Position numbers and translations under genes: made by a program. A stretch of 62,749 nucleotides of DNA, filler included, from Bipalium vagum (lineage: Eukaryota): assembly GCA_037834085.1 (NCBI GenBank). It is 3 parts of 3 records of this genome, joined end to end, with 100 filler letters (N's around TTAATTAATTAA, not from the genome) between each part and the next. Parts side by side here need not be neighbours in the genome. Positions count along the whole stretch, not along the records: positions 1 to 16,591 come from JBBMKC010104045.1; 2 more parts are not named here. One strand, 5' to 3'. The notes under the pieces are model-generated. The model saw only the letters and a list, made by a program, of their open reading frames with translations. It did not search any database and was not told where the DNA came from. Positions 690 through 13,066 of the stretch are shown here, in pieces (the stretch's first letter is position 1; the number at the start of each line of letters is the position of its first letter).

Positions 690-2352
690 TACTGATCATA
701 TTTGTATGAAATAAGGTCCTCTCACTCAGTCAATTGTTAGAATTTTGCAACTTGACATAGATAACACACAATTGTGCACATCAAAATTATAGAGTTACCA
801 ATATTTATAAATGTACTGCTTACAAGTGCAATCAAACACGATACCTGAGCATGCCGGACTTAACCAGCAGAGACCATATTCTACCAAGCGAATGGAATTG
901 GATTTATAGATAAAATGTGCCTGTTGCTATGCGAAATAATGTTCAATTGGCAATACACAATACACTTATTCAATGGGTGCATTGGTCTGATAGCATTGAA
1001 CACTTTGATGTTGTATGTGTGCATTGTGTTGTGTCCTTGGTTTGTGTGCACACGCCAGTAGCGAAGTGTGTCGATTGTGTATGTATGACTGTACATAAAA
1101 CAGCTGTGAACACGTCATAACGCTGGAACTCTGTTATTGACTATTTTGGCTTGTATTTTGATTCTGCCTATTTAGTATTTAAACCACAACAAATTAAGAA
1201 ATGTTTGTCTACACATTAATATAACTAATCTTTTATTGATTAATACTATGCAGATTTTTCCGTTCTTTCCTTATTTGTGTTTTAAATTCTTTAGTTTGCA
1301 GTTTTTCAGGAAATAGCCAAAAAGTCATTTCTAGTCGTAAATGTAAACAGAGCGAAAAAGGGACTTACTTTTTGACAATTATTCCTTTTAGACAAGTACA
1401 GATGTTGTAATGGAAGAAAGCAATTATAAATAATAAATTTAAAATCTATACGATTTCAAATTACCGATATCGATCTGTGATATTTATTAAAGTTTTGTTT
1501 TGTTTTGAGGTCTATTTTGCCATTTCTTAAGCAGTGGGTTGGGTTAATAATGGTTTCCTGATCTCATGTTTTGACCTCAGTTAATAAAATAGCTTTCTTT
1601 TATAAGAACTCTAGGGTTGTTGCTTTGTACGTCGTCATGTGGAACTGTTCCTCCCCTCAATGTACTTTGATTTTAATCATTTTCATTAAAATTTTTAATT
1701 AATTAAATTACATTAATTGATTATATAAATTAGAACAGAATGAAATATATCGTTGTATATTAATTGTATATAAATTATATTTTATTGCTGTGGTTTTTGT
1801 TTTATCATACACAAAACTGAAATACGTGTAACAAAAATATTTTAAAATATTTATTTTTAATAATTTCTTGAAAAATAAAATAATTTAAAAATATACATTA
1901 AGATTTTTATAAATTTATAATGTTAAGGTTATTGAACTTTGGGTCTCATAAAATACCAAAAATTTTATTACATTTTCTAAATAAATTTATTAAGGATTTA
2001 TTGTACGGTATTTTGAAAAATTTTATTTATTTATTATTAATTGAAAATACACGATAAAAAATAATTGAGTTCTCAATCAAATCATGTATAAATGATTTTA
2101 AACAAGTGCAATATTGTAGGAACTTTTAGTAGAAAACTTTATTTTATTTGGACATATTTAATAAATTAAATTGATTAAATTTATTATTTTTCTTATGGTT
2201 CTTCTAACCAGATCACAAACTTGTTGAAAACAATTGGGATTCCTATAAAAAAAATCTCTGTTTGAGCTACAATTATTTTCGCACTTCAATTCTTTTTTAA
2301 ATAAAGAACTTTTTTCTTTTACAATTTAACATTTTTAGGACCTTTAATTAAT

Positions 2353-2424
2353 CGGAGATACCGGGATTTGAACTCGGGACTTTCACATACACATGTACTG
2401 CTCTGACCGCTGAGCTACATCTCC
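2353..2424 (-). pseudogene. tRNA-Ala-derived core of the 3' LTR (not a functional tRNA)
   Basis: 72 nt: GGAGATG TAGCTCAGCGGTCAGAGC ... CCGAGTTCAAATCCCGG TATCTCC G. Acceptor stem, D arm, A box and B box are recognisable; the anticodon stem does not pair. Confidence 0.75.
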
Positions 2425-2449
2425 CGACTAATTTTCAATTTATCTCACA

Positions 2450-2462
2450 TACCCCCTCATTT
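2450..2462 (-). promoter_or_regulatory. Polypurine tract (PPT) of the TRIM
   Basis: AAATGAGGGGGTA immediately upstream of the TG of the 3' LTR. Confidence 0.7.
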
Positions 2463-2551
2463 AAATCTCACATCCATACCCTTAACCGCACCGAGTCTCT
2501 TTACTTTCATTTCCATTCCATTCCTTTACATTTTTACTTTCGCTGGTTGGT

Positions 2552-2569
2552 GTCCTGGTGTGGTCGCCA
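2552..2569 (-). promoter_or_regulatory. Primer-binding site (PBS), probably tRNA-Arg
   Basis: TGGCGACCACACCAGGAC directly after the LTR-terminal CA. Its complement ...GTGGTCG-CCA resembles the 3' end of metazoan tRNA-Arg(TCG); the isoacceptor is an inference. Confidence 0.75.
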
Positions 2570-2602
2570 TGTTAATTGAAAATTAATCGGAGATATTGGG
2601 AT

Positions 2603-3036
2603 ACCAACGTACAATATTTTATTTAAAAAACAAGTTTTTTCTTTCACGAACTTAATCGTTTTCACATAAATGTGAGCATATTATGGCTTTGCTTCATCTT
2701 CATTTTGGAGCAGGTCATTATCGCAGTCGTCGAGATTTTCAGCAGCATCATCAGACAGGCATTGATTTTGGTCGTCATTGAGGTTTTGATCTTTAATTTC
2801 ATGGAGCTCGGAGAAATTTACTGATTGTTTTCTAACATCTCTGTGAAATTTCCAATGCGCAGCACTCCATTTGATATTAGACGCCACGCAGAACTTTCAG
2901 ATTTTGGTTATTTGACATTTAGGAAATTGGAGACTTCTCAGAATTTTCTCATTTCACTTTTACCATGATCCAATGCAGCTGACTGCGAATGTATCTAGCA
3001 GAACAGTCCAATCTGTCAGGGCTTTTTGGTCTGGAC
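2603..3036 (-). mobile_element. 3'-terminal fragment of a NeSL/Utopia-like RLE non-LTR retrotransposon, inserted in the LTR tRNA core
   Basis: One frame reads ...DWTVLLDTFAVSCIGSW*K*NEKILRSLQFPKCQITKI*KFCVASNIKWSAAHWKFH..., matching the post-endonuclease C-terminal pattern of NeSL-clade proteins (GSW-x3-NE-x-L ... VS-x2-I-x-WS). Stop at 2681, then a short 3' UTR with AATAAA, then an abrupt return to tRNA sequence at 2602. Confidence 0.75.
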
Positions 3037-3959
3037 TGCACATGGACTGCTCTGACCGCTGAGCTACATCTCCCGACTAATTTTCAATTTATCTCACAAA
3101 TATATTAACATGATAATGTTATTATGTGTCATATCCTAAATGGGGAAAAAATAAAGAATAAAAGAAAGAATCTGGTTATCGGTAGTCATCTTTGTTATAT
3201 AATAATGAAAATAAATACTTTTTTTCCCAAATACAATTTTAAAAAGAATGAATAAAAACAGATATACTTTTTAATCTAACAAGTCCAATATTATCTTTAT
3301 TTTTTAATAATATTAAACTACAAATAAAATTTATTCAAAATATTTTTTCATTGTAATCTTTAGACTAATAATTAATTAACAAAATCAAATTTCGATATTC
3401 GACCTATAATTCTTATTTGATGTTTTTTGTTTTAATGTTCATTTTCAAACAAATCTTATTATTAACCTTGTTATTTTTATTTCATCACTGCTAAGGGGTT
3501 CAAAAGAATATTCCGTCTATATAATCACTCTGAACATTGAAACGAACTTCAATTTTAAATTAAAGGGGGTTTTTAATTTAAAGGGCTTTAAATCACTCAT
3601 TATTTAAATTTATAAATGAATAAATATTAGTTACAGCTTGGTTTTATTATGATTAATATGTAAATATAAAAGGTTGGTTTATTATTATCTTAGAAAGTTA
3701 CTTTTACCGACAGTTTCAAGGTTTTTGTATTGATAAATAAAGAATCTTAAATTTAGTTACAAGACCTATTTTTATTCAATTAAACTTGCACATTATAACA
3801 AAAGTTCCACAAACTTTTTTCTAAAAATTAATGAAAACTTTTGAGGAAATGATAAAAATGTATGCAATATTGTAAAAATAAATATTTATTGAGAAATTAG
3901 AGATTTTGATCATTAGTATAGTTTTCTGAATAATATTTTAAAACTTTTGATCAATTATA

Positions 3960-5208
3960 TTGGGTAATCCGTAAAGTTTTTTTCGCTTTTTATCCATTAG
4001 AATATTATTGTTTGTTGTTTAAATAATAAGAGCACCATTTGATTTCTGTGGGAACATTTTGAAAGAATATAAGTAAGGCTCTAAATTAATGAAATTTAAA
4101 TAAATAATTTTTCTTAAATATTGATTATTTATCTAGATAAATATGTACATAACAAAGGAGCATTTGAGATGGATAATGTACTACTTCTTTCGGATGGGAG
4201 AAAAGACAACTGTTGCAGCTCATTCTATATGTAATATTTATAAGGAAGGTGTAATATCTGAACGAGTAGTGCAGTATTGGTTCCAGAAATCTCGTTATGG
4301 TGAAACATCGATAAAGGACGCTAACCGGTCAGGTAGACCCACTGTCATTGACGATGACGTTTTGAAGGAGCTGGTAATATCAAACCCTGGAATGACATGT
4401 CAGGAAATTGCTAAAAAACTTTCAATCTCCAAAACAATTGCAAATGACCAGCAGAGGAAAGGCTTTGTGAACAAACTGAATTTTTGGATTCCGCATACAC
4501 TCTCAGAAAGTGATTTGATTTACCACATCAACATCTGCGAATCATTGATAAAAAAGTATGGCTAAAATGGCTAAAAATGAGGTTCAGCCATTTTTGAAAC
4601 AGATGATGAAAGTTGGAACCTTTTATCGAAATGTTACGAGAAAAAGATCCTGGCTAAAAAGGAGTGATCTTCCACTACCGACACTAAAGACGCGATTACT
4701 ACTCAAAAAGGCAATGGTTTCATTATGATGAGATTGAAAGGTCCTTCTATTATGAGCCAATTCCGACCAATGAAATAATAGATTCAGAGATTTACTGTAA
4801 GTAATTGCAAAATTTACAGACTGCTATTGTAGAAAAACGATTTTATTTGGCGATTAGAAAAGGTGTTGTATTCTACCGGGACAATGTCAGACCCAACGCA
4901 TCAATAATCATTAGAACGAAGCTGAACGAGTCTGGCTGGGATGTTTTGCAGAATTCCGCAAACTCACCAGACCTTTTACCAATTGACTTCCATTTCTTTA
5001 AATATTGGAACCACTTCTTAAGAGATAGATATTTCAGGAGATACTAAAAATAATTCCAGAACTCCGGAATTTTACATTATTGATATAAAATAAAATTGGA
5101 CGAAATGTATCCAATCGAATGGTTTGTATTTTGATTAATAAAGTTTCGTTTTATTAAAAACATTTACATTAAAAGTTTAAATCCGGCATTTACTTTTAAG
5201 CAACCTAA
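3960..5208 (+). mobile_element. Degenerate mariner transposon
   Basis: TA-flanked imperfect TIRs (TTGGGTAATCC.../...AAGCAACCTAA). Transposase fragments 4143-4565 (RSGRP, WIPHTL) and 4805-5047 (DNVRP, SPDLLPIDF) with stops and frameshifts. Confidence 0.9.
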
Positions 5209-5872: not shown

Positions 5873-7583
5873 CTCAGCGACATCGGGTTCTGCTCCTGCA
5901 AAAATAGAGAATAAATTAATAAATAAATAAATGTGCATTTAAATTAAATCTTTAACTAAAAAAATTAAAAAAAACAATATTTTGGCTATATGCTAAATTA
6001 TGACAATTGAAGATAAAACCAAACTATGACTTTTCTGTAACCACCATATTATATATTGACCTACTTATATTAAATCAGTTATCCACTTTCCTGATTTAAT
6101 ACCTTTGATTCGTCGATATGATGATCATTTTTATCATTTATTCCTGAGACTTTATTAAGATCACTTAAATTATCTACATCGTCAGGTACATCTTTGACAC
6201 TGCTGACATCGTCATTTGAATCTTTCAAAGTTTCTTCATGTTCATCTTTTAAGGTTTCCTTTTCTTCTGTATTGTCATGAACTTTTTCAGTTTGGACAAT
6301 ATCAGAACTATGCTCTTCTTTTTGTTCCACAGATAATTCAGAAAAATCGTTATCATTATCATTTGCTGGTTTATTGTCGTCAGAAGATGTGATTTCACCG
6401 AATACGGAATCATGAGGATTTTTCTGGTTCATTAAATCCTCATTGTCAATTAAAGGGGATTTCTGATCAGATTTGTCATCTAAATTTTCATTTTCGTCTA
6501 TATTTTCGTTGAATGTTTCAGTGGAAAAATTTTCAGAATGCATGTTACCATTATCTTCCATTGGTAATTCAGAATAATTCTCCACGGGATTGTGGTCTTC
6601 AGCATCAATAACTTCACTATTTAATACTTCTAAAATGTTTTGGTTTGGAAATTCATCACTTTGAATCGGAATTGATTCATTATTTAATATTCCCATTTCA
6701 TTATCAGTAATACCACTCTCACTTGTATATTTGTTTTCTTGATCTTCGGTTTCGATCTCATTCAATATATTTTCTATTTGTAAAACATTATTCATAGTAT
6801 CTACCAGTTGATCATCATCTTTCACGTCTTCCGTGCTCATTTCGGACTTTTCACGTAATTCCTCACCAGATTCTTTTATATCGACATCCTTATCTTCACT
6901 TTCTACTAAATCTGGTACTTGACTATTCACTAGACTTGCATCTTTCCTATCTACTGATTCTTTATTTTCATTTTCTCCATCACTTTTAACACCATGGATA
7001 TCCTCATTATCTAAAATACCTTCTTCACAATTCTCATATTTTTGCACATCGTTTTCCCCGGTTTTATTTACTTGAGACATTTCATCATTCATTTCGAGCG
7101 ATTTCAGGTTAATCTCATCAGAAATATTTTCCAACTGATTAGAATTATTATCTACATTTTCTTTTTCAAAATTTCTAAAATCAGCACTAGATTCACTTAT
7201 CTCGCCTTCCATAACCTTTTCCGAGCTGTCCTGAACATCTATTTCCTTTACATCTTCGTTTTCACATTGATTGAGGTCTTCACTATTTATATTTCTATTA
7301 ATTACTCCATTGACCGTTTCAAAATCGTTTTCTAATTTGGATGCTGTATTTTCGTTGCTTTTAACTATAGAATCATAGCCAGAATGTTGTTCTACACTAC
7401 TTTCAGGTATACTTTTTGTCGTGTTCATGTTCACGTCCTCAATATCAGTTGTAGCAGGAAATTTATTAGTAGGACACTTGTCAGGCACTTTACCTTCGCT
7501 AATATTTTCATGACCATCTTTTTGGCTTGTCAGAATCAAATTGCTGTTTAAATTTGACGACGACGCTGACGTCGATGATATAT
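5873..7583 (-). CDS. Large acidic low-complexity (D/E/N/S-rich), probably disordered protein; internal exons
   Basis: 523-codon ORF 6079-7650 whose coding-like composition starts at the TTTTAG acceptor (exon from 7583). A phase-compatible 23-nt exon lies at 5895-5873 (TTGCAG|...|GTAAAT). No recognisable domain. Confidence 0.7.
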
Positions 7584-10500
7584 CTAAAATAAATTTCAAA
7601 TAATTAATAAAACTAATTATAATTATTTTATATAAAAGATAATTTATCAATATTTCATTTATTTGTTAATTTTTTTTTCAAATTAATTAATTAATTTTAA
7701 TTACAATTTATAAAATCTTCCGAAAATATTTTAAAAATAATACAATCAATAATATTTATTTTTATTAAATTTCATTATTGATATATTTACCATATTTGTA
7801 TATCTGATGTCTGTCATTGAGATTTTTAATGACATTTGTTTAACTAATCACTTTTAGGAGATCTGTAAAAATCAAATTACATTTTAAGCATACTATCGGG
7901 CCACTTCGACTTGAGGAATGGAGATTATTTTAAAAGAATTAAACTTGCAATTTGAAACATGTTTTAAGAAAAAGCTATTCTTTTGTGTTGACGGTATCTT
8001 CCAAGAGTTTATAAGAGTGTCAAAAATATTTTAAACATATTATAGTGAAAATATAACTAAAAGTTATTTAACTAAATGCAAAAGATTACAATTCATTTAA
8101 GATATATTTATGTAGCAACAATAATAAATTATTATAATAATGAATAATAATAACAATAATCATTTTTTATGGATCAAGTCATCTTGACTTTGTTTTTCCA
8201 ATTATATTCTTTTTTAACCACTTCTTTTTAACTGTTTTATTATTTAATTTTATATGAGTTGTTTTAATAACTGAATTTATGATATAAAAAACTTTTAAAG
8301 CGGATAATTATAATTTATCTTAAAATTCAGTTAAAGAATGTTATATTATAATCAAAGAGATTATCGATCCCTTGAGAAATAAATGTCATCAAAGAATATA
8401 AAAGCATATATCAAAAGACTTACAACTGAGTTTGACAAGTGATGTAGCATAAAATATATAATTATAGATCAAACGTATAAGACATTTATAAATTATTCAA
8501 AAACCGAATCTCCATAAACTAAAATGCTATATATCCCCAAAAATAGAGTATTTACTTTAAAATGAAAGGCAGGTTCGCGGTATTCAGTATCACATCAGAA
8601 AGCAATGTTAGAGAGTAAAAATTAATATTGTTTGGGGAAAACATTTTTCGTAATTTATTGAAACTTTGAAAATCAATATTATATATATATATATATAATT
8701 AACTGTTAATGTTTTATGTTAAAATATATAAGTGAAAGATTTGTGTTAATATTATCATATTGTGAAGTAATTACGAATATTTTGTAAAAGTTGGTATGTT
8801 TTTTAATTTTTTGTCAAAAATAAATTTTGTCTAAATAAAAAAACCACAAGAAATTCGATATAGATTTTCATTTAACAAAATTATTTTATGACTGCTGTGA
8901 TTTTAAACGGATCAGTTTTATGAACTCTTGCAGTAAGTTAAAACAATTAATTCTGACCTGAATGGTAACCAAGTAACAAAATTAAATCAAATGATCGAAA
9001 AACCTATATTAAAGTTAATAACAAAAAAAAACCGTTTTATTCTAGCAAGACATATCTATGAAGCACCGACACAAACTAACCAAATTTGGTTGGTAAATAA
9101 TGATAAATTAACTATAAAATCCAGATATTACGCGGTCAGATTATCATTCATTTAAATCTCTACAGAACTCTCAAAATGGAGCATCTTAGTGAAAAAATCT
9201 TCGGGTATATACAGGAATTTTGAAGAAAATTTTTTGATAAAACTCAAAGAAATTTTTTAATGAAGTAATAATGACCACTTGAAAATTTCTGAAATCGTAT
9301 AGATGTAAAAGGTGGATATGCGGTTTAAAATAAACACTTTCATATCACTTGGTCTATTCATTTTCTCTTTTTTAAAATAAGAAACAAATTTCCCCACCTA
9401 ATAGTTAATTATCATATATTATATAATATTATATATTATAATTATATATAAAACACCAGCCAAATAATAAAGAAAAAATATTATTTAAAGAAATGATTAT
9501 AAAACATAATAATTAAAAATACTACAGAAGCCAGTAGTAGAACTTAATGATAATAATATTGAGGATGAATAGAGACCACTTAAAGCAAAGTAGGCCTACT
9601 GGACTTAATATAAATGTCTAAAATAGGAAAGAAATAATTTAAGCTTTTCACTTACAAAAATTTTCATTCTCTTCATATTCTGTGGTCTATTACATAAAGT
9701 TAATAAAATTTTATTTATTAAAAAAATAAAAATTGTGAGAACAGATAATAGATCATTAAGAATTTAGGAAAATAAATAAATTATAGTATGATTATAATGT
9801 TGAGAATATTAGATTTAAAAATAGATGAGTTAGATAAAATGAAGACGAATATTTTTAGTATAATAAAGGACATCATTAAAATTATTATTTTATTGAAAAT
9901 TGAAAAAGTGATAAAACATTTAATATTTATTATTGACAGAATAAAGATAACATTTCAATGATTTTCCAAAGAATTAAGAAAAATAATCTACTCCAATTTG
10001 TATATATAAAAAGAAACGAAAAGATCTTGAATAAATCAGAAATTATTAAAAAAAAAAGCAAGGATAACCTTAATATTATACACTGGACAAGGGAACCTTT
10101 TTAATATCGAACTGGAATATCTTAACGATATTTACTGAATGATATAAGTACAATATGAAATGGAAATAATATATATATATACCTGGACAAAAAATTGTTT
10201 TCCTCAAGAATACAAAATTTCTTACCACTTCACTGGGAACATTTAAGGAAAAGAAATAATTTCATAAACTCAATATTTTCTCTACAGGATTCTTATAATA
10301 AAACACTAGGTGATGGTGTGACATTTCTTATTTCGAAAATTATTTTTTATTTTTTTACTTTTCATCTTATGTTACTTTTAAATAAAAGTAAAATGAAAAA
10401 AGTTTAAATTAGAAAAATAATGTCTTTTATAAAAACAATATTTTTATTTTGAATGTCAGAGAATGACTTTTAAAGTAAAATTTAACTTTTTGAAGAAACC

Positions 10501-11180: not shown

Positions 11181-13066
11181 CACTATCTGCAAAAAGTATT
11201 CGTACGATCACTTTTACATTTAGAAAAAGTTACATTTAGAAAAGGCAAAGAAACTTATGAAATAAAACAAAGTATTTATATGCAGTACTGATGTAACTGC
11301 TTGCATTTAACAAAACTGTTTATAAAATTTAATTATAAAACAAAAAAATTACATAGAATAAAATTTATACGAATATTTGTATTCTAACAGTATTGTTCAT
11401 ATAATTTTGTTTTAATAATATTTATTGACCCATATATTTCAAATGAAGATAAATGATTATTATTAACTTATTATTAATTTTGCATTACAAAAACATGTAA
11501 TCTGAATGAATTCAGATTTCTTTAAGAAATGAAAATATTATTGTTAGCAGGTATTTCAGTAAAGTCACTCATAGTTTCAAAAATTTTATTATTCCAATAA
11601 AAATAAAAATACTTAAACAAATTAAATTAATTATTTAAATAAAGTGTCTCTTATTATTTTTTTAAAAAAATATTTTAAAATTAACTAATACATTAAATTA
11701 ATGAATATTCATATCGAATTTTAAAAATGACACTTTATAAAAATTTAAAAATTCGAAAATATGTTCAAATACTCACAATTATAATGGGGCATAGGTCAAA
11801 AGAACACTCAGTTTATTTCAGAAATGCAAATCTAAAATTAAGAAATGATGGAATTAGCTTTGGTCAGATCTCTGCCACGTTGCAATGTTCAAAGTCAACT
11901 ATTCATTCCAACGTGAATAAATGTTTCCTCTTATCTCTACCTCTGAGTGGTCAGCGAAGAATAACAACTGTCAGGGAAGATCTGATTATTTAGAGATACG
12001 TCAAAATGAATCAGCGGACGCACTCTATACAATTGAATAAGACAAATAATATAATTTCCAGACGATCAACTATCAGAAACTGACTAAAAGAGATATGTTT
12101 ACACGGTCGAATGGGCAAGAAAAAACCTTTCATTTCTAAGAAAAATGTCAAAGAAAGGGTGAAGTGGGTGAGAAAACTTCTGAGTGATCACTATGGTCGG
12201 ACGAAAGCAAGTTTGATGTATTTTGGAACAATGAAAAAGTTACTGTATGGATGTATTGAGGTCATGAAATGTGTTGATCAATCACCGGACATAAACTTAT
12301 GGGCCTACTTGAAAAGAAAACTAAGGGAGAGAGATAACCGGAAAAGAAAGGTTGAAAGCATGTCTCATAAAAGAATGGCAGAAAATTCTTTCTGATTTCT
12401 GCAAAAAACTTACCCAATCAATGCATAATATATGTCAAATGGTACTTAATAGGAAAGGAATAACAATAAAATATTAAACATGTCAGATACATTTAATACT
12501 TTTTTGTTTATATGTCATAAATATAATCATACGAATAATTTATGTGGTCTTAATTTCTTGAGGTTTCCAAACCTAAGTCGATCGATTTTTGAAAATTTTT
12601 TTTATCTTTATGCTATTTGATACTTACATATGACTTTGCTTGTTCCACGTCATTTAAAATTGTTTGTGATATTTTACATTCTTCTGCGTTTAGATCCTGC
12701 AATTTCAAATTCCACACCACTCTCTTTGCTTCGTATAATTCTTCCCACAGTATTTCTATTTATGTCAAGTGCGTCAGCAATTTACTTAATTGTATGACCA
12801 TTTTGAAACATAGTCAATACTAAGTTATATATATTTTTGAGATTTCTTTTCTGTATTTTCTTGCCATAATGTAAATGAATCAATATCTATAATTTAAAAT
12901 ATTATTAATAATAAATACTATTATGTAATACTATTAATTTGCAATACCCTGTAATATGATGTAGATTTGATTACAATTATTTTTCAATTAGTAAGTGCCA
13001 TACTGCTTTATAAACCAAAATATTTTATAAATGAAGAGATTGTATGAATAATTCTTGCAGATAGTG
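11181..13066 (+). mobile_element. Degenerate Tc1-family transposon (IR/DR type), internally deleted
   Basis: TIR CACTATCTGCAAAAAGTATTCGTACGAT (TA-preceded) pairs with ATTGTATGAATAATTCTTGCAGATAGTG. Transposase remnants at 11783-12420 (HTH, KKKPFISKKN, QSPDIN, LWAYLKRKL). Confidence 0.85.
12630..12867 (-). mobile_element. Nested remnant of a second IS630/Tc1-like transposase N-terminus
   Basis: MARKYRKEIS.../LTMFQNGHTIK*IADALDINRNTVGRII: HTH-like, with a frameshift and a stop. Confidence 0.5.

What the first reader, a model, noticed from the sequence alone, without database searches (positions are those of the whole stretch)
2570..3098. Candidate site-specific RLE retrotransposon targeting the tRNA core of a TRIM LTR: 3' junction
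Seen: the 5' LTR is split by a 434-bp insert. LTR sequence stops in the anticodon region (3037) and resumes at ATCCC.. (2602), inside the T-loop/B box (consensus GTTCAA^ATCCCGG), with about 20 nt of target lost on the 5' side and no TSD. The insert encodes a NeSL/Utopia-like C-terminus plus 3' UTR, in the same orientation as the tRNA. Established: R2/NeSL/Utopia RLE elements insert by target-primed reverse transcription at fixed sites in multicopy RNA genes, giving precise 3' junctions and truncated 5' ends with target deletions. Inference: this family cleaves the T-loop of tRNA-Ala-like sequence and uses the dispersed TRIM LTRs as landing sites, a transposon parasitising a transposon. I recall some tRNA-associated NeSL-clade families from planarians, so novelty must be checked against Repbase.
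Basis: partly seen in the sequence, partly recalled or inferred. Interest (0 to 1): 0.9.

Follow-up and report, generated by a model that had tools for sequence, protein, structure and literature searches.

The report
Retrotransposon that targets another retrotransposon's tRNA-like core
The 434-bp insert is a dead, 5'-truncated copy of a site-specific R2/NeSL-type retrotransposon that inserts, hundreds of times in this genome, at one fixed point in the tRNA-like T arm carried by the terminal repeats of a miniature LTR retrotransposon: one mobile element living inside another.

Summary
On the minus strand, a miniature LTR element (TRIM, 3098..2346) has its 5' LTR split by a fragment at 3034..2608. 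The fragment is the last 117 codons (three in-frame stops) plus a 73-nt 3' UTR of a roughly 6-kb non-LTR retrotransposon. That element encodes a Ulp1-like protease, a reverse transcriptase, a CCHC knuckle and a restriction-like endonuclease (RLE).

Genome-wide:
- 372 element 3' ends abut the LTR T loop (reversed-pattern control 0), against 1240 uninterrupted sites.
- All 100 listed exact 3' ends continue into LTR-type sequence. None enters a genuine tRNA gene.
- 9 of 11 true 5' ends in the DNA I hold have the LTR 5' part directly upstream, at nine different points in the element. These are independent insertions.
- At least three lineages, diverged to about 66% identity, share the site and the terminal AAAATTTTGTWCG.

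- The 3' junction lies at the T-stem/T-loop boundary (G^TTCGAAT, window 2608/2607), not inside the loop.
- Full-length copies lose only 4-5 target bases. This copy loses about 15.

NeSL-clade elements specific for tRNA genes and tRNA-bearing TRIMs ("Helenus") are each published; I found no report of the combination. It is a new variant of a known kind. RT phylogeny and the host species remain untested.

The parts
3037..3098 (-). 5' LTR of the TRIM, 5' part: 24-nt leader plus acceptor, D arm and anticodon region of the tRNA-like core, including the A box
   Evidence: 98% identical to the matching part of the second LTR. The same sequence starts intact TRIM copies elsewhere.
3035..3036 (-). two bases (GT) at the 5' junction of uncertain origin
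   Evidence: They match neither the LTR nor other copies of the element at this position. Such extra bases are usual at 5' junctions formed by target-primed reverse transcription.
2608..3034 (-). 5'-truncated copy (427 nt) of a ~6-kb RLE-type, NeSL-like non-LTR retrotransposon
   Evidence: At least 40 scored copies (233 candidates) at 84-93% identity. Other copies continue further 5'. It corresponds to the last 7% of the reference copy L031.
2681..3034 (-). remnant of the ORF's C-terminus: end of the RLE domain plus an acidic tail; 117 codons, three in-frame stops, then the natural stop
   Evidence: tblastn against the intact relative L039 ORF, aa 360-422: 52% identity, E 5e-20. That stretch of L039 aligns to the RLE C-terminus of solved R2 proteins.
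2608..2680 (-). 3' UTR ending ..AAATAAAATATTGTACG, with no poly(A)
   Evidence: The terminal AAAATTTTGTWCG is conserved in three lineages whose remaining 3' UTR differs.
2570..2607 (-). 5' LTR, 3' part: T loop (mutated here), 3' T stem, acceptor 3' strand and LTR tail ending ..TTAACA
   Evidence: The same sequence follows the element's 3' end in 372 places and ends intact LTRs.
2450..2569 (-). TRIM internal region: PBS-like TGGCGACCACACCAGG at 2569 onward, purine tract ..GAGGGGG.. at about 2463-2450
   Evidence: Conserved in TRIM copies genome-wide: 1757 candidates, 85-90% identity.
2346..2449 (-). 3' LTR of the TRIM, uninterrupted, lacking the last ~11 nt
2353..2424 (-). intact tRNA-like core of the 3' LTR, i.e. 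an empty target site
   Evidence: ARAGORN. Rfam RF00005 at 45.3 bits, E 5e-7.

Best explanation
The insert is a relic of a site-specific non-LTR retrotransposon of the R2 group. Its architecture is NeSL-like: Ulp1-like protease, reverse transcriptase, CCHC knuckle, restriction-like endonuclease.

Its target is the tRNA-like T arm inside the ~115-bp LTRs of a Helenus-type TRIM.

Shown by sequence:
- The element always lies in the tRNA/LTR orientation.
- Its 3' end (..TTTTGTWCG, no poly(A)) abuts T54 of the T loop (TTCGAATCC..).
- Upstream, the LTR runs to ..GTGAAGGTC(C). The 5' strand of the T stem (CCGGG, 4-5 nt) is therefore lost and no duplication is made.
- 5' ends are full-length or truncated at many different points.

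Inferred from R2 biochemistry:
- The protein binds its own 3' UTR and recognises the T-arm DNA.
- The RLE nicks the bottom strand at the T-stem/T-loop boundary and the RT primes cDNA synthesis from that nick.
- The top strand is then cut a few bases upstream.
- Abortive reverse transcription gives truncated dead copies such as the one in this window.

The insertion separates the A box from the B box of the LTR's pol III-type promoter.
For: Anatomy in the window.

Domains:
- Peptidase_C48 in the window's own family (L031:5788-5979, 23.6 bits against a cutoff of 20.7).
- Peptidase_C48 in the relative L036.
- RVT_1.
- R2 structures are the best PDB hits (E 7e-46).
- CCHC + RLE aligns with domain E-values of 1e-5 for L036 and 3e-12 for L039.
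- L039 sits in the same LTR site.

3' junction:
- 372 matches at up to 3 mismatches, reversed-pattern control 0.
- 26 of 30 fetched copies carry the LTR tail and then unrelated flank or the PBS.
- 100 of 100 listed exact 3' ends continue into LTR-type sequence.

5' junction:
- The LTR 5' part lies directly upstream of two full-length copies (L034, L038), one near-full copy (L031) and six copies truncated at different points (L014, L030, L016, L021, the window, L012).
- L031 sits in a 3' LTR and the window copy in a 5' LTR.

Empty sites: 1240.

The target is a genuine LTR element: TG..CA ends and 5-bp duplications in 8 copies.

Three lineages diverged to about 66% identity share the site.
Against: - Two of 11 true 5' ends (L003, L020) have no LTR sequence upstream.
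- The 3' LTR tail alone cannot be told apart from an element-borne tail.
- No cleavage or TPRT assay exists.
- No HDV-like ribozyme or other Rfam family was found at the 5' junction, so how the element is transcribed is unknown.
- N-terminal DNA-binding motifs were not identified.
Confidence: 0.85

Rival explanations
1. The ~38-nt T-loop-to-LTR-end tail belongs to the element itself. The element would then insert at random, and the TRIM LTR (or a SINE-like unit) would merely share or have borrowed the LINE's 3' tail, as SINE/LINE partners do.
For: In most copies the tail is followed directly by unrelated DNA. Two 5' ends lack any LTR upstream.
Against: - Nine of 11 true 5' ends have the LTR 5' part immediately upstream, always ending in the same few bases before the T stem.
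- Upstream and downstream LTR parts together rebuild one LTR minus 4-5 nt.
- PBS and internal TRIM sequence follow or precede in register.
- Chance expectation for such a flank is below 1e-3 per site.
Confidence: 0.05
2. One or a few ancient insertions into an LTR were later multiplied as a composite, either by TRIM retrotransposition or by segmental duplication. The many copies would then not be independent site-specific events.
For: About 20 of the 100 listed exact 3' junctions share an identical LTR variant (..GGTGTCTCCAATTTA), often at similar contig positions. Part of the copy number could therefore come from duplication.
Against: - There are nine different 5' end points with different outer flanks.
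- Insertions occur in 5' LTRs, in 3' LTRs and in LTRs with no TRIM interior beside them.
- Three lineages diverged to ~66% identity occupy the same site.
- That LTR variant exists as 190 exact copies with varied flanks, so it is a second LTR family and not one duplicated locus.
Confidence: 0.06
3. The LTR-element junctions are chimeric retrocopies made by template switching from element RNA to TRIM or tRNA-like RNA during reverse transcription, like U6-L1 chimeras, and were inserted at random sites.
For: The 5' part always has the tRNA-like sequence in sense orientation directly joined to a truncated element.
Against: - A template switch would copy the tRNA-like RNA up to its 3' end. Here it stops before the T stem, and the missing T loop and acceptor strand reappear exactly at the element's 3' end.
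- The neighbouring PBS, internal region and second LTR show that the target was a resident TRIM.
Confidence: 0.03

Closest known systems
tRNA-gene-specific NeSL-clade families: NeSL-1_TV (tRNA-Pro), planarian LIN15_SM (tRNA-Arg) and LIN25_SM (tRNA-Glu) (Kojima & Jurka 2015, PMC4640811)
   Same: RLE-type non-LTR elements with a fixed 3' junction inside a tRNA sequence, in the tRNA's orientation, using a multicopy small-RNA sequence as a safe landing site.
   Different: - Those families sit in genuine tRNA genes. Here every 3' flank examined is the LTR-specific version (..TCTCCGATTAATTTTCA..), and the exact variable-loop and T-arm sequence of the target occurs only in LTRs.
- The junction is at the T-stem/T-loop boundary, whereas the LIN15_SM junctions shown in that paper's supplement lie further 5' in the tRNA.
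- The LIN15_SM junction is absent from this genome.
NeSL-1 of Caenorhabditis elegans (Malik & Eickbush 2000, as cited in PMC4640811)
   Same: Ulp1-like cysteine protease upstream of the RT, C-terminal zinc knuckle plus RLE, and site specificity for a multicopy RNA gene.
   Different: NeSL-1 targets spliced-leader genes. Phylogenetic relatedness was not tested here.
R2 (28S rDNA-specific; solved structures 9nl2, 9dou, 8gh6)
   Same: Best structural-database matches across the RT and the CCHC + RLE domain. Precise 3' junction, variable 5' truncation, a small target deletion, and no poly(A).
   Different: Only 23-26% identity to named R2 proteins. There is an extra Ulp1 protease domain, a different target, and no HDV-like ribozyme detected at the 5' end.
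Helenus / TRIMp3 (Kojima 2024, PMC10886601): the target element
   Same: A TRIM of ~350 bp whose LTRs carry a tRNA-like sequence, with PBS, PPT and target duplications.
   Different: It makes 5-bp duplications, whereas animal Helenus are reported to make 4-bp ones. That paper does not mention non-LTR insertions in Helenus.
Tx1L, an APE-type LINE that inserts into the Tx1D DNA transposon (my own knowledge; 'transposons' are listed as LINE targets in PMC4640811)
   Same: A retrotransposon whose specific target is another transposon.
   Different: It uses an APE endonuclease and belongs to the Tx1 clade. Its target is a DNA transposon, not a tRNA-like core of an LTR.

Membership tests
RLE-type (R2-group) non-LTR retrotransposon | Reverse transcriptase of the non-LTR type | tested here: met
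   RVT_1 in L031, L037, L038 and L036. R2 proteins are the best PDB hits at E 7e-46, against 1e-15 for L1 ORF2.
RLE-type (R2-group) non-LTR retrotransposon | CCHC knuckle followed by a PD-(D/E)xK restriction-like endonuclease, C-terminal to the RT | tested here: met
   CRKC..H....C, then R-I-D-L .. I-D-I/V-K .. H-Y, aligned to the R2 RLE (domain 2, E 3e-12). The window's peptide aligns to the end of this domain.
RLE-type (R2-group) non-LTR retrotransposon | No apurinic/apyrimidinic (APE) endonuclease domain | tested here: met
   No Exo_endo_phos hit in any piece or in the 1223-aa open frame. The L036 frame is cut by the contig end at its N-terminus.
RLE-type (R2-group) non-LTR retrotransposon | Fixed 3' junction, variable 5' truncation, same target on both sides | tested here: met
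NeSL clade | Ulp1-like cysteine protease domain N-terminal to the RT | tested here: met
   Peptidase_C48 in the window's family, in L036 and in five metagenomic homologues.
NeSL clade | RT groups with NeSL-1, R5 and Utopia in a phylogeny | not testable with these tools
   No reference NeSL, R4, HERO or CRE sequences could be obtained. The only named homologues were R2 proteins.
NeSL clade | N-terminal zinc-finger DNA-binding motifs | tested here: inconclusive
   No significant Pfam hit in the ~2 kb upstream of the protease. The copies are degraded there.
Helenus / TRIMp3 (target element) | Two short LTRs, each holding a tRNA-like sequence | tested here: met
   Rfam tRNA at 45.3 bits. ARAGORN finds cloverleaves in both LTRs of L046 and L056.
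Helenus / TRIMp3 (target element) | PBS next to the 5' LTR, purine tract before the 3' LTR, target-site duplication, no coding capacity | tested here: met
   TGG.. follows ..CA, GAGGGGG precedes TG.., and 5-bp duplications are seen in L046, L049, L050, L051, L053, L056, L061 and L065. Total length is about 350 bp.
SINE/LINE tail-sharing pair (rival) | Element copies flanked by unrelated DNA at their 5' ends | tested here: not met
   9 of 11 true 5' ends are flanked by the LTR 5' part.

The most novel reading that the evidence does not exclude
A whole radiation of NeSL-like lineages has left tRNA genes for a mobile, self-multiplying copy of a tRNA.
- At least three lineages, diverged to about 66% identity, are involved.
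- They recognise only the tRNA-like T arm, because they also hit a second LTR family with different flanks.
- They occupy roughly a quarter of all target LTRs.
- By splitting the A and B boxes they disable the TRIM's pol III promoter.

This would be a three-level parasite chain (host, autonomous LTR element, TRIM, NeSL) in which the hyperparasite's niche grows by retrotransposition, and a natural example of retargeting an R2-like enzyme to a new short DNA site.
Probability: 0.3. Interest if true: 0.7.

Novelty: new variant of a known kind. Interest (0 to 1): 0.6.

Why it matters
Site-specific RLE retrotransposons (R2 and its relatives) are the model for target-primed reverse transcription. They are also being developed for RNA-templated gene insertion, so how such enzymes acquire new targets is an open practical question.

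Here a lineage with NeSL architecture uses a 20-30-nt tRNA-like T arm as its address, but only in the version carried by a miniature LTR retrotransposon. Its landing sites are therefore dispersed, dispensable and able to multiply.

The genome offers hundreds of natural insertion events, several diverged enzyme lineages on one target and two LTR families carrying that target. This is good material for mapping the determinants of recognition.

It also warns annotators that tRNA-like hits, split LTRs and LINE tails in such genomes can be parts of one nested structure.

Tried and rejected
I then used only pattern counts and the roughly 70 loci already held.
- An Rfam search of the full-length 5' junction (L034) for an HDV-like or other ribozyme found nothing at E <= 1.
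- Host identification failed. Sequencing-run names are coded and the protein atlas and homologue sources give no taxon. The planarian LIN15_SM/tRNA-Arg junction from PMC4640811 is absent, so the host is not close to Schmidtea by that test.
- ORF1 of the metagenomic relatives (L070, L071) has no detectable homologue in the window's family.
- No N-terminal DNA-binding domain was found.
- The 'unrelated upstream' seen at first in L005, L006, L015, L017 and L022 turned out to be internal deletions, not 5' ends. This raised the share of LTR-flanked 5' ends from 6/12 to 9/11.
- My early idea that the 430-bp unit plus tail is a solo LTR of another element was dropped once copies were seen to extend 5.9 kb upstream and to encode an RT.
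- I made no RT tree, because the only named reference was R2.

Full report
**What is in the window**

The window is AT-rich (21-35% GC). All features below are read on the minus strand.

| Window coordinates | Feature |
|---|---|
| 3098 | LTR begins TGTGAGAT |
| 3098..3037 | LTR-like sequence |
| 3036-3035 | two bases (GT) of unclear origin |
| 3034..2608 | foreign sequence (the insert) |
| 2607..2570 | LTR sequence resumes and ends ..TTAACA |
| 2569 onward | PBS-like TGGCGACCACACC.., then about 120 bp of internal sequence ending in a purine tract |
| 2449..2346 | second LTR, lacking its last ~11 nt |

- The second LTR has an uninterrupted tRNA-like core. ARAGORN places it at 2353-2424. Rfam tRNA scores 45.3 bits against a threshold of 29.
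- The two LTR 5' parts are 98% identical over 60 nt.

**What the insert is**

- The genome holds at least 40 scored copies (233 candidates) of the insert at 84-93% identity.
- Other copies run on upstream of the window's 5' junction.
- The longest held copies span 5.9-6.1 kb: L031, L034 and L038.
- All copies of this particular lineage that I hold are degraded.

Their pieces, and more intact relatives in the same genome, give these domains:

| Domain | Evidence |
|---|---|
| Peptidase_C48 (Ulp1) | L031:5788-5979, 23.6 bits against cutoff 20.7; L036 |
| RVT_1 | |
| zf-RVT | |

- A 1223-codon open frame fills contig L036 from end to end. Its best PDB matches are R2 proteins (E 7e-46). A second aligned block covers the CCHC knuckle and the restriction-like endonuclease.
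- The intact 550-aa C-terminal ORF of L039 aligns to the same R2 domain at E 3e-12.
- The window's insert, read in one frame, matches L039 residues 360-422. Identity is 52% and E is 5e-20. It carries three in-frame stops and then the natural stop at 2683-2681, leaving a 73-nt 3' UTR.
- The insert is thus the last 117 codons and the 3' UTR of an RLE-type ORF.
- Ulp1 protease plus RT plus RLE is the architecture described for nematode NeSL and one Utopia family (PMC4640811).

**Is the element site-specific?**

*3' side*
- In 26 of 30 fetched copies the element ends ..TTTTGTACG. It is followed by TTCGAATCCCGGTATCTCCGATTAATTTTCA(A)CTAACA, and then by unrelated DNA or by the TRIM's PBS.
- A 31-nt pattern across this junction occurs 372 times at up to 3 mismatches. 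The reversed control occurs 0 times.
- 205 places carry the exact 18-nt junction. All 100 that were listed continue into LTR-type acceptor and tail sequence, and none enters an unrelated tRNA end.
- The exact variable-loop and T-arm 21-mer, followed by anything other than the LTR's next base, occurs only 7 times. All 7 are mutated LTRs.
- The landing sites are therefore LTRs, not genuine tRNA genes.
- On its own, the 3' side cannot exclude that the tail belongs to the element.

*5' side (decisive)*
- Five of the copies that first seemed to have unrelated upstream DNA are internal deletions (L005, L006, L015, L017, L022).
- Of the 11 true 5' ends in held DNA, 9 have the LTR 5' part directly upstream. 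In each case that part ends within ..CATGTGAAGGTC(C):
  - two full-length copies (L034, L038);
  - one copy about 200 nt shorter (L031);
  - six copies truncated at different points (L014, L030, L016, L021, the window, L012).
- L031 lies in a 3' LTR, with PBS, internal region and LTR start upstream. The window copy lies in a 5' LTR.
- Two ends (L003, L020) lack LTR sequence upstream.
- With at most a few thousand LTRs in 440 Mb, the chance of such a flank at a random site is below 1e-3.
- These are therefore independent insertions into one site.

**Junction anatomy**

- The target reads ..GTGAAGGTC CCGGG TTCGAAT CCCGG TATCTCC G.. In order these are the variable loop, 5' T stem, T loop, 3' T stem, acceptor strand and discriminator base (Rfam alignment).
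- The element replaces CCGG(G).
- Its 3' end abuts T54, with one G ambiguous. The upstream LTR ends at GGTC(C).
- The result is a 4-5-nt target deletion and no duplication.
- The window copy has lost about 15 nt on the 5' side.

**Scale and diversity**

- 1240 uninterrupted sites match the equivalent 31-nt pattern.
- By these two like-for-like counts, roughly 23% of detectable sites are occupied. Both counts are lower bounds.
- Most exact junctions belong to a TTTTGTTCG lineage. Its coding and 3' UTR sequence is only about 66% identical to the window's lineage (L058).
- L039 is a third lineage, about 67% identical.
- All three end in AAAATTTTGTWCG at the same site.
- About a fifth of the listed exact junctions lie in a second LTR family with a different tail (..GGTGTCTCCAATTTATTTGAACCTAACA). 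That family has 190 exact copies with varied flanks.
- This suggests that recognition rests on the tRNA-like core.
- A protein fragment of the family finds more than 1600 candidate places, so related elements are abundant.

**The target element**

- The target is a genuine LTR retroelement with TG..CA ends, a PBS and a purine tract.
- Eight complete copies have 5-bp target duplications, and there are at least 1757 candidate copies.
- It fits 'Helenus' (TRIMp3), the TRIMs with tRNA-like LTRs described by Kojima (2024, PMC10886601).
- Animal Helenus are reported there to make 4-bp duplications.
- ARAGORN finds a cloverleaf with an aberrant anticodon loop and assigns no amino acid. 'tRNA-Ala-like' therefore remains unverified.

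**Mechanism**

- By analogy with R2, the protein would bind its 3' UTR and nick the bottom strand at the T-stem/T-loop boundary.
- It would prime reverse transcription from that nick and cut the top strand 4-5 nt upstream.
- Only the junction geometry is shown here. The biochemistry is inferred.
- No ribozyme was detected at the 5' junction, so the mode of transcription is open.
- The insertion separates the A box from the B box of the LTR.

**Comparison with what is known**

- Kojima & Jurka (2015) already reported NeSL-related families specific for tRNA genes. These are NeSL-1_TV (tRNA-Pro) and the planarian LIN15_SM (tRNA-Arg) and LIN25_SM (tRNA-Glu).
- Targeting of another transposon is known for APE-type Tx1 elements.
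- I found no report of an RLE element specialised on the tRNA-like core of a TRIM LTR.
- Repbase could not be searched.
- I rate this a new variant of a known kind.

**Limits**

- I built no consensus and repaired no frame.
- Clade placement by phylogeny and the host's identity remain open. The sample of 5' ends is small.
- The nearest database homologues are unnamed metagenome proteins with the same protease-RT architecture.

Noticed in passing
G000, e.g. C71995:6952-6985, C73181:6966-6999, C26040:658-706 (not in the window): A second LTR family ends ..CCCGGTGTCTCCAATTTATTTGAACCTAACA. It has 190 exact copies with varied flanks, and about a fifth of the listed exact NeSL-type 3' junctions lie in it. 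Several sit at similar contig positions, so part of this set may be duplicated composites.
   Followed up: partly
L058 (G000:C96192), L043, L048, L052, L064; L039 (G000:C236217): Two further lineages of the element are only about 66-67% identical to the window's lineage, yet end in the same 13 nt and sit at the same LTR site. L039 keeps an open 550-codon C-terminal frame with a long Asp/Asn-rich acidic tail.
   Followed up: partly
L070 7760-7800 and L071 (JGI metagenome contigs): The closest database relatives (39-41% identity) have two ORFs: an unannotated ORF1 of about 1100 aa, then protease-RT-RLE. L070's 3' end also reads ..AAATTTTTGTAC, but it is followed by sequence that is not tRNA-like, so it may have a different target.
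   Followed up: no
window 4143-4565 (+): The N-terminal part of a mariner/Mos1-type transposase (HTH_48, E 3e-13): another transposon relic 1 kb from the TRIM.
   Followed up: partly
window 12111-12395 (+): A short ORF with a weak Tc1/Tc3-type transposase HTH match (E 0.009), probably a degraded Tc1-like element.
   Followed up: no
window 6079-7650 (-): A 523-codon open frame, very acidic and Asn/Asp/Glu/Ser-rich, with no Pfam match. It could be a low-complexity exon or a chance open frame in AT-rich DNA.
   Followed up: no
L041, L044, L047, L057 and others: Many TRIM copies have a 5' LTR that lacks its first 30-60 nt (truncated at varying points) while the 3' LTR is complete. The cause is unexplained.
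   Followed up: no
L003 (G000:C230168) and L010 (G000:C74538), just after the element's 3' end: Two copies share the same foreign sequence (..CACTTGTCTTCTATTTCC..) in place of the LTR tail. This suggests a further element inserted at or near the same junction.
   Followed up: no
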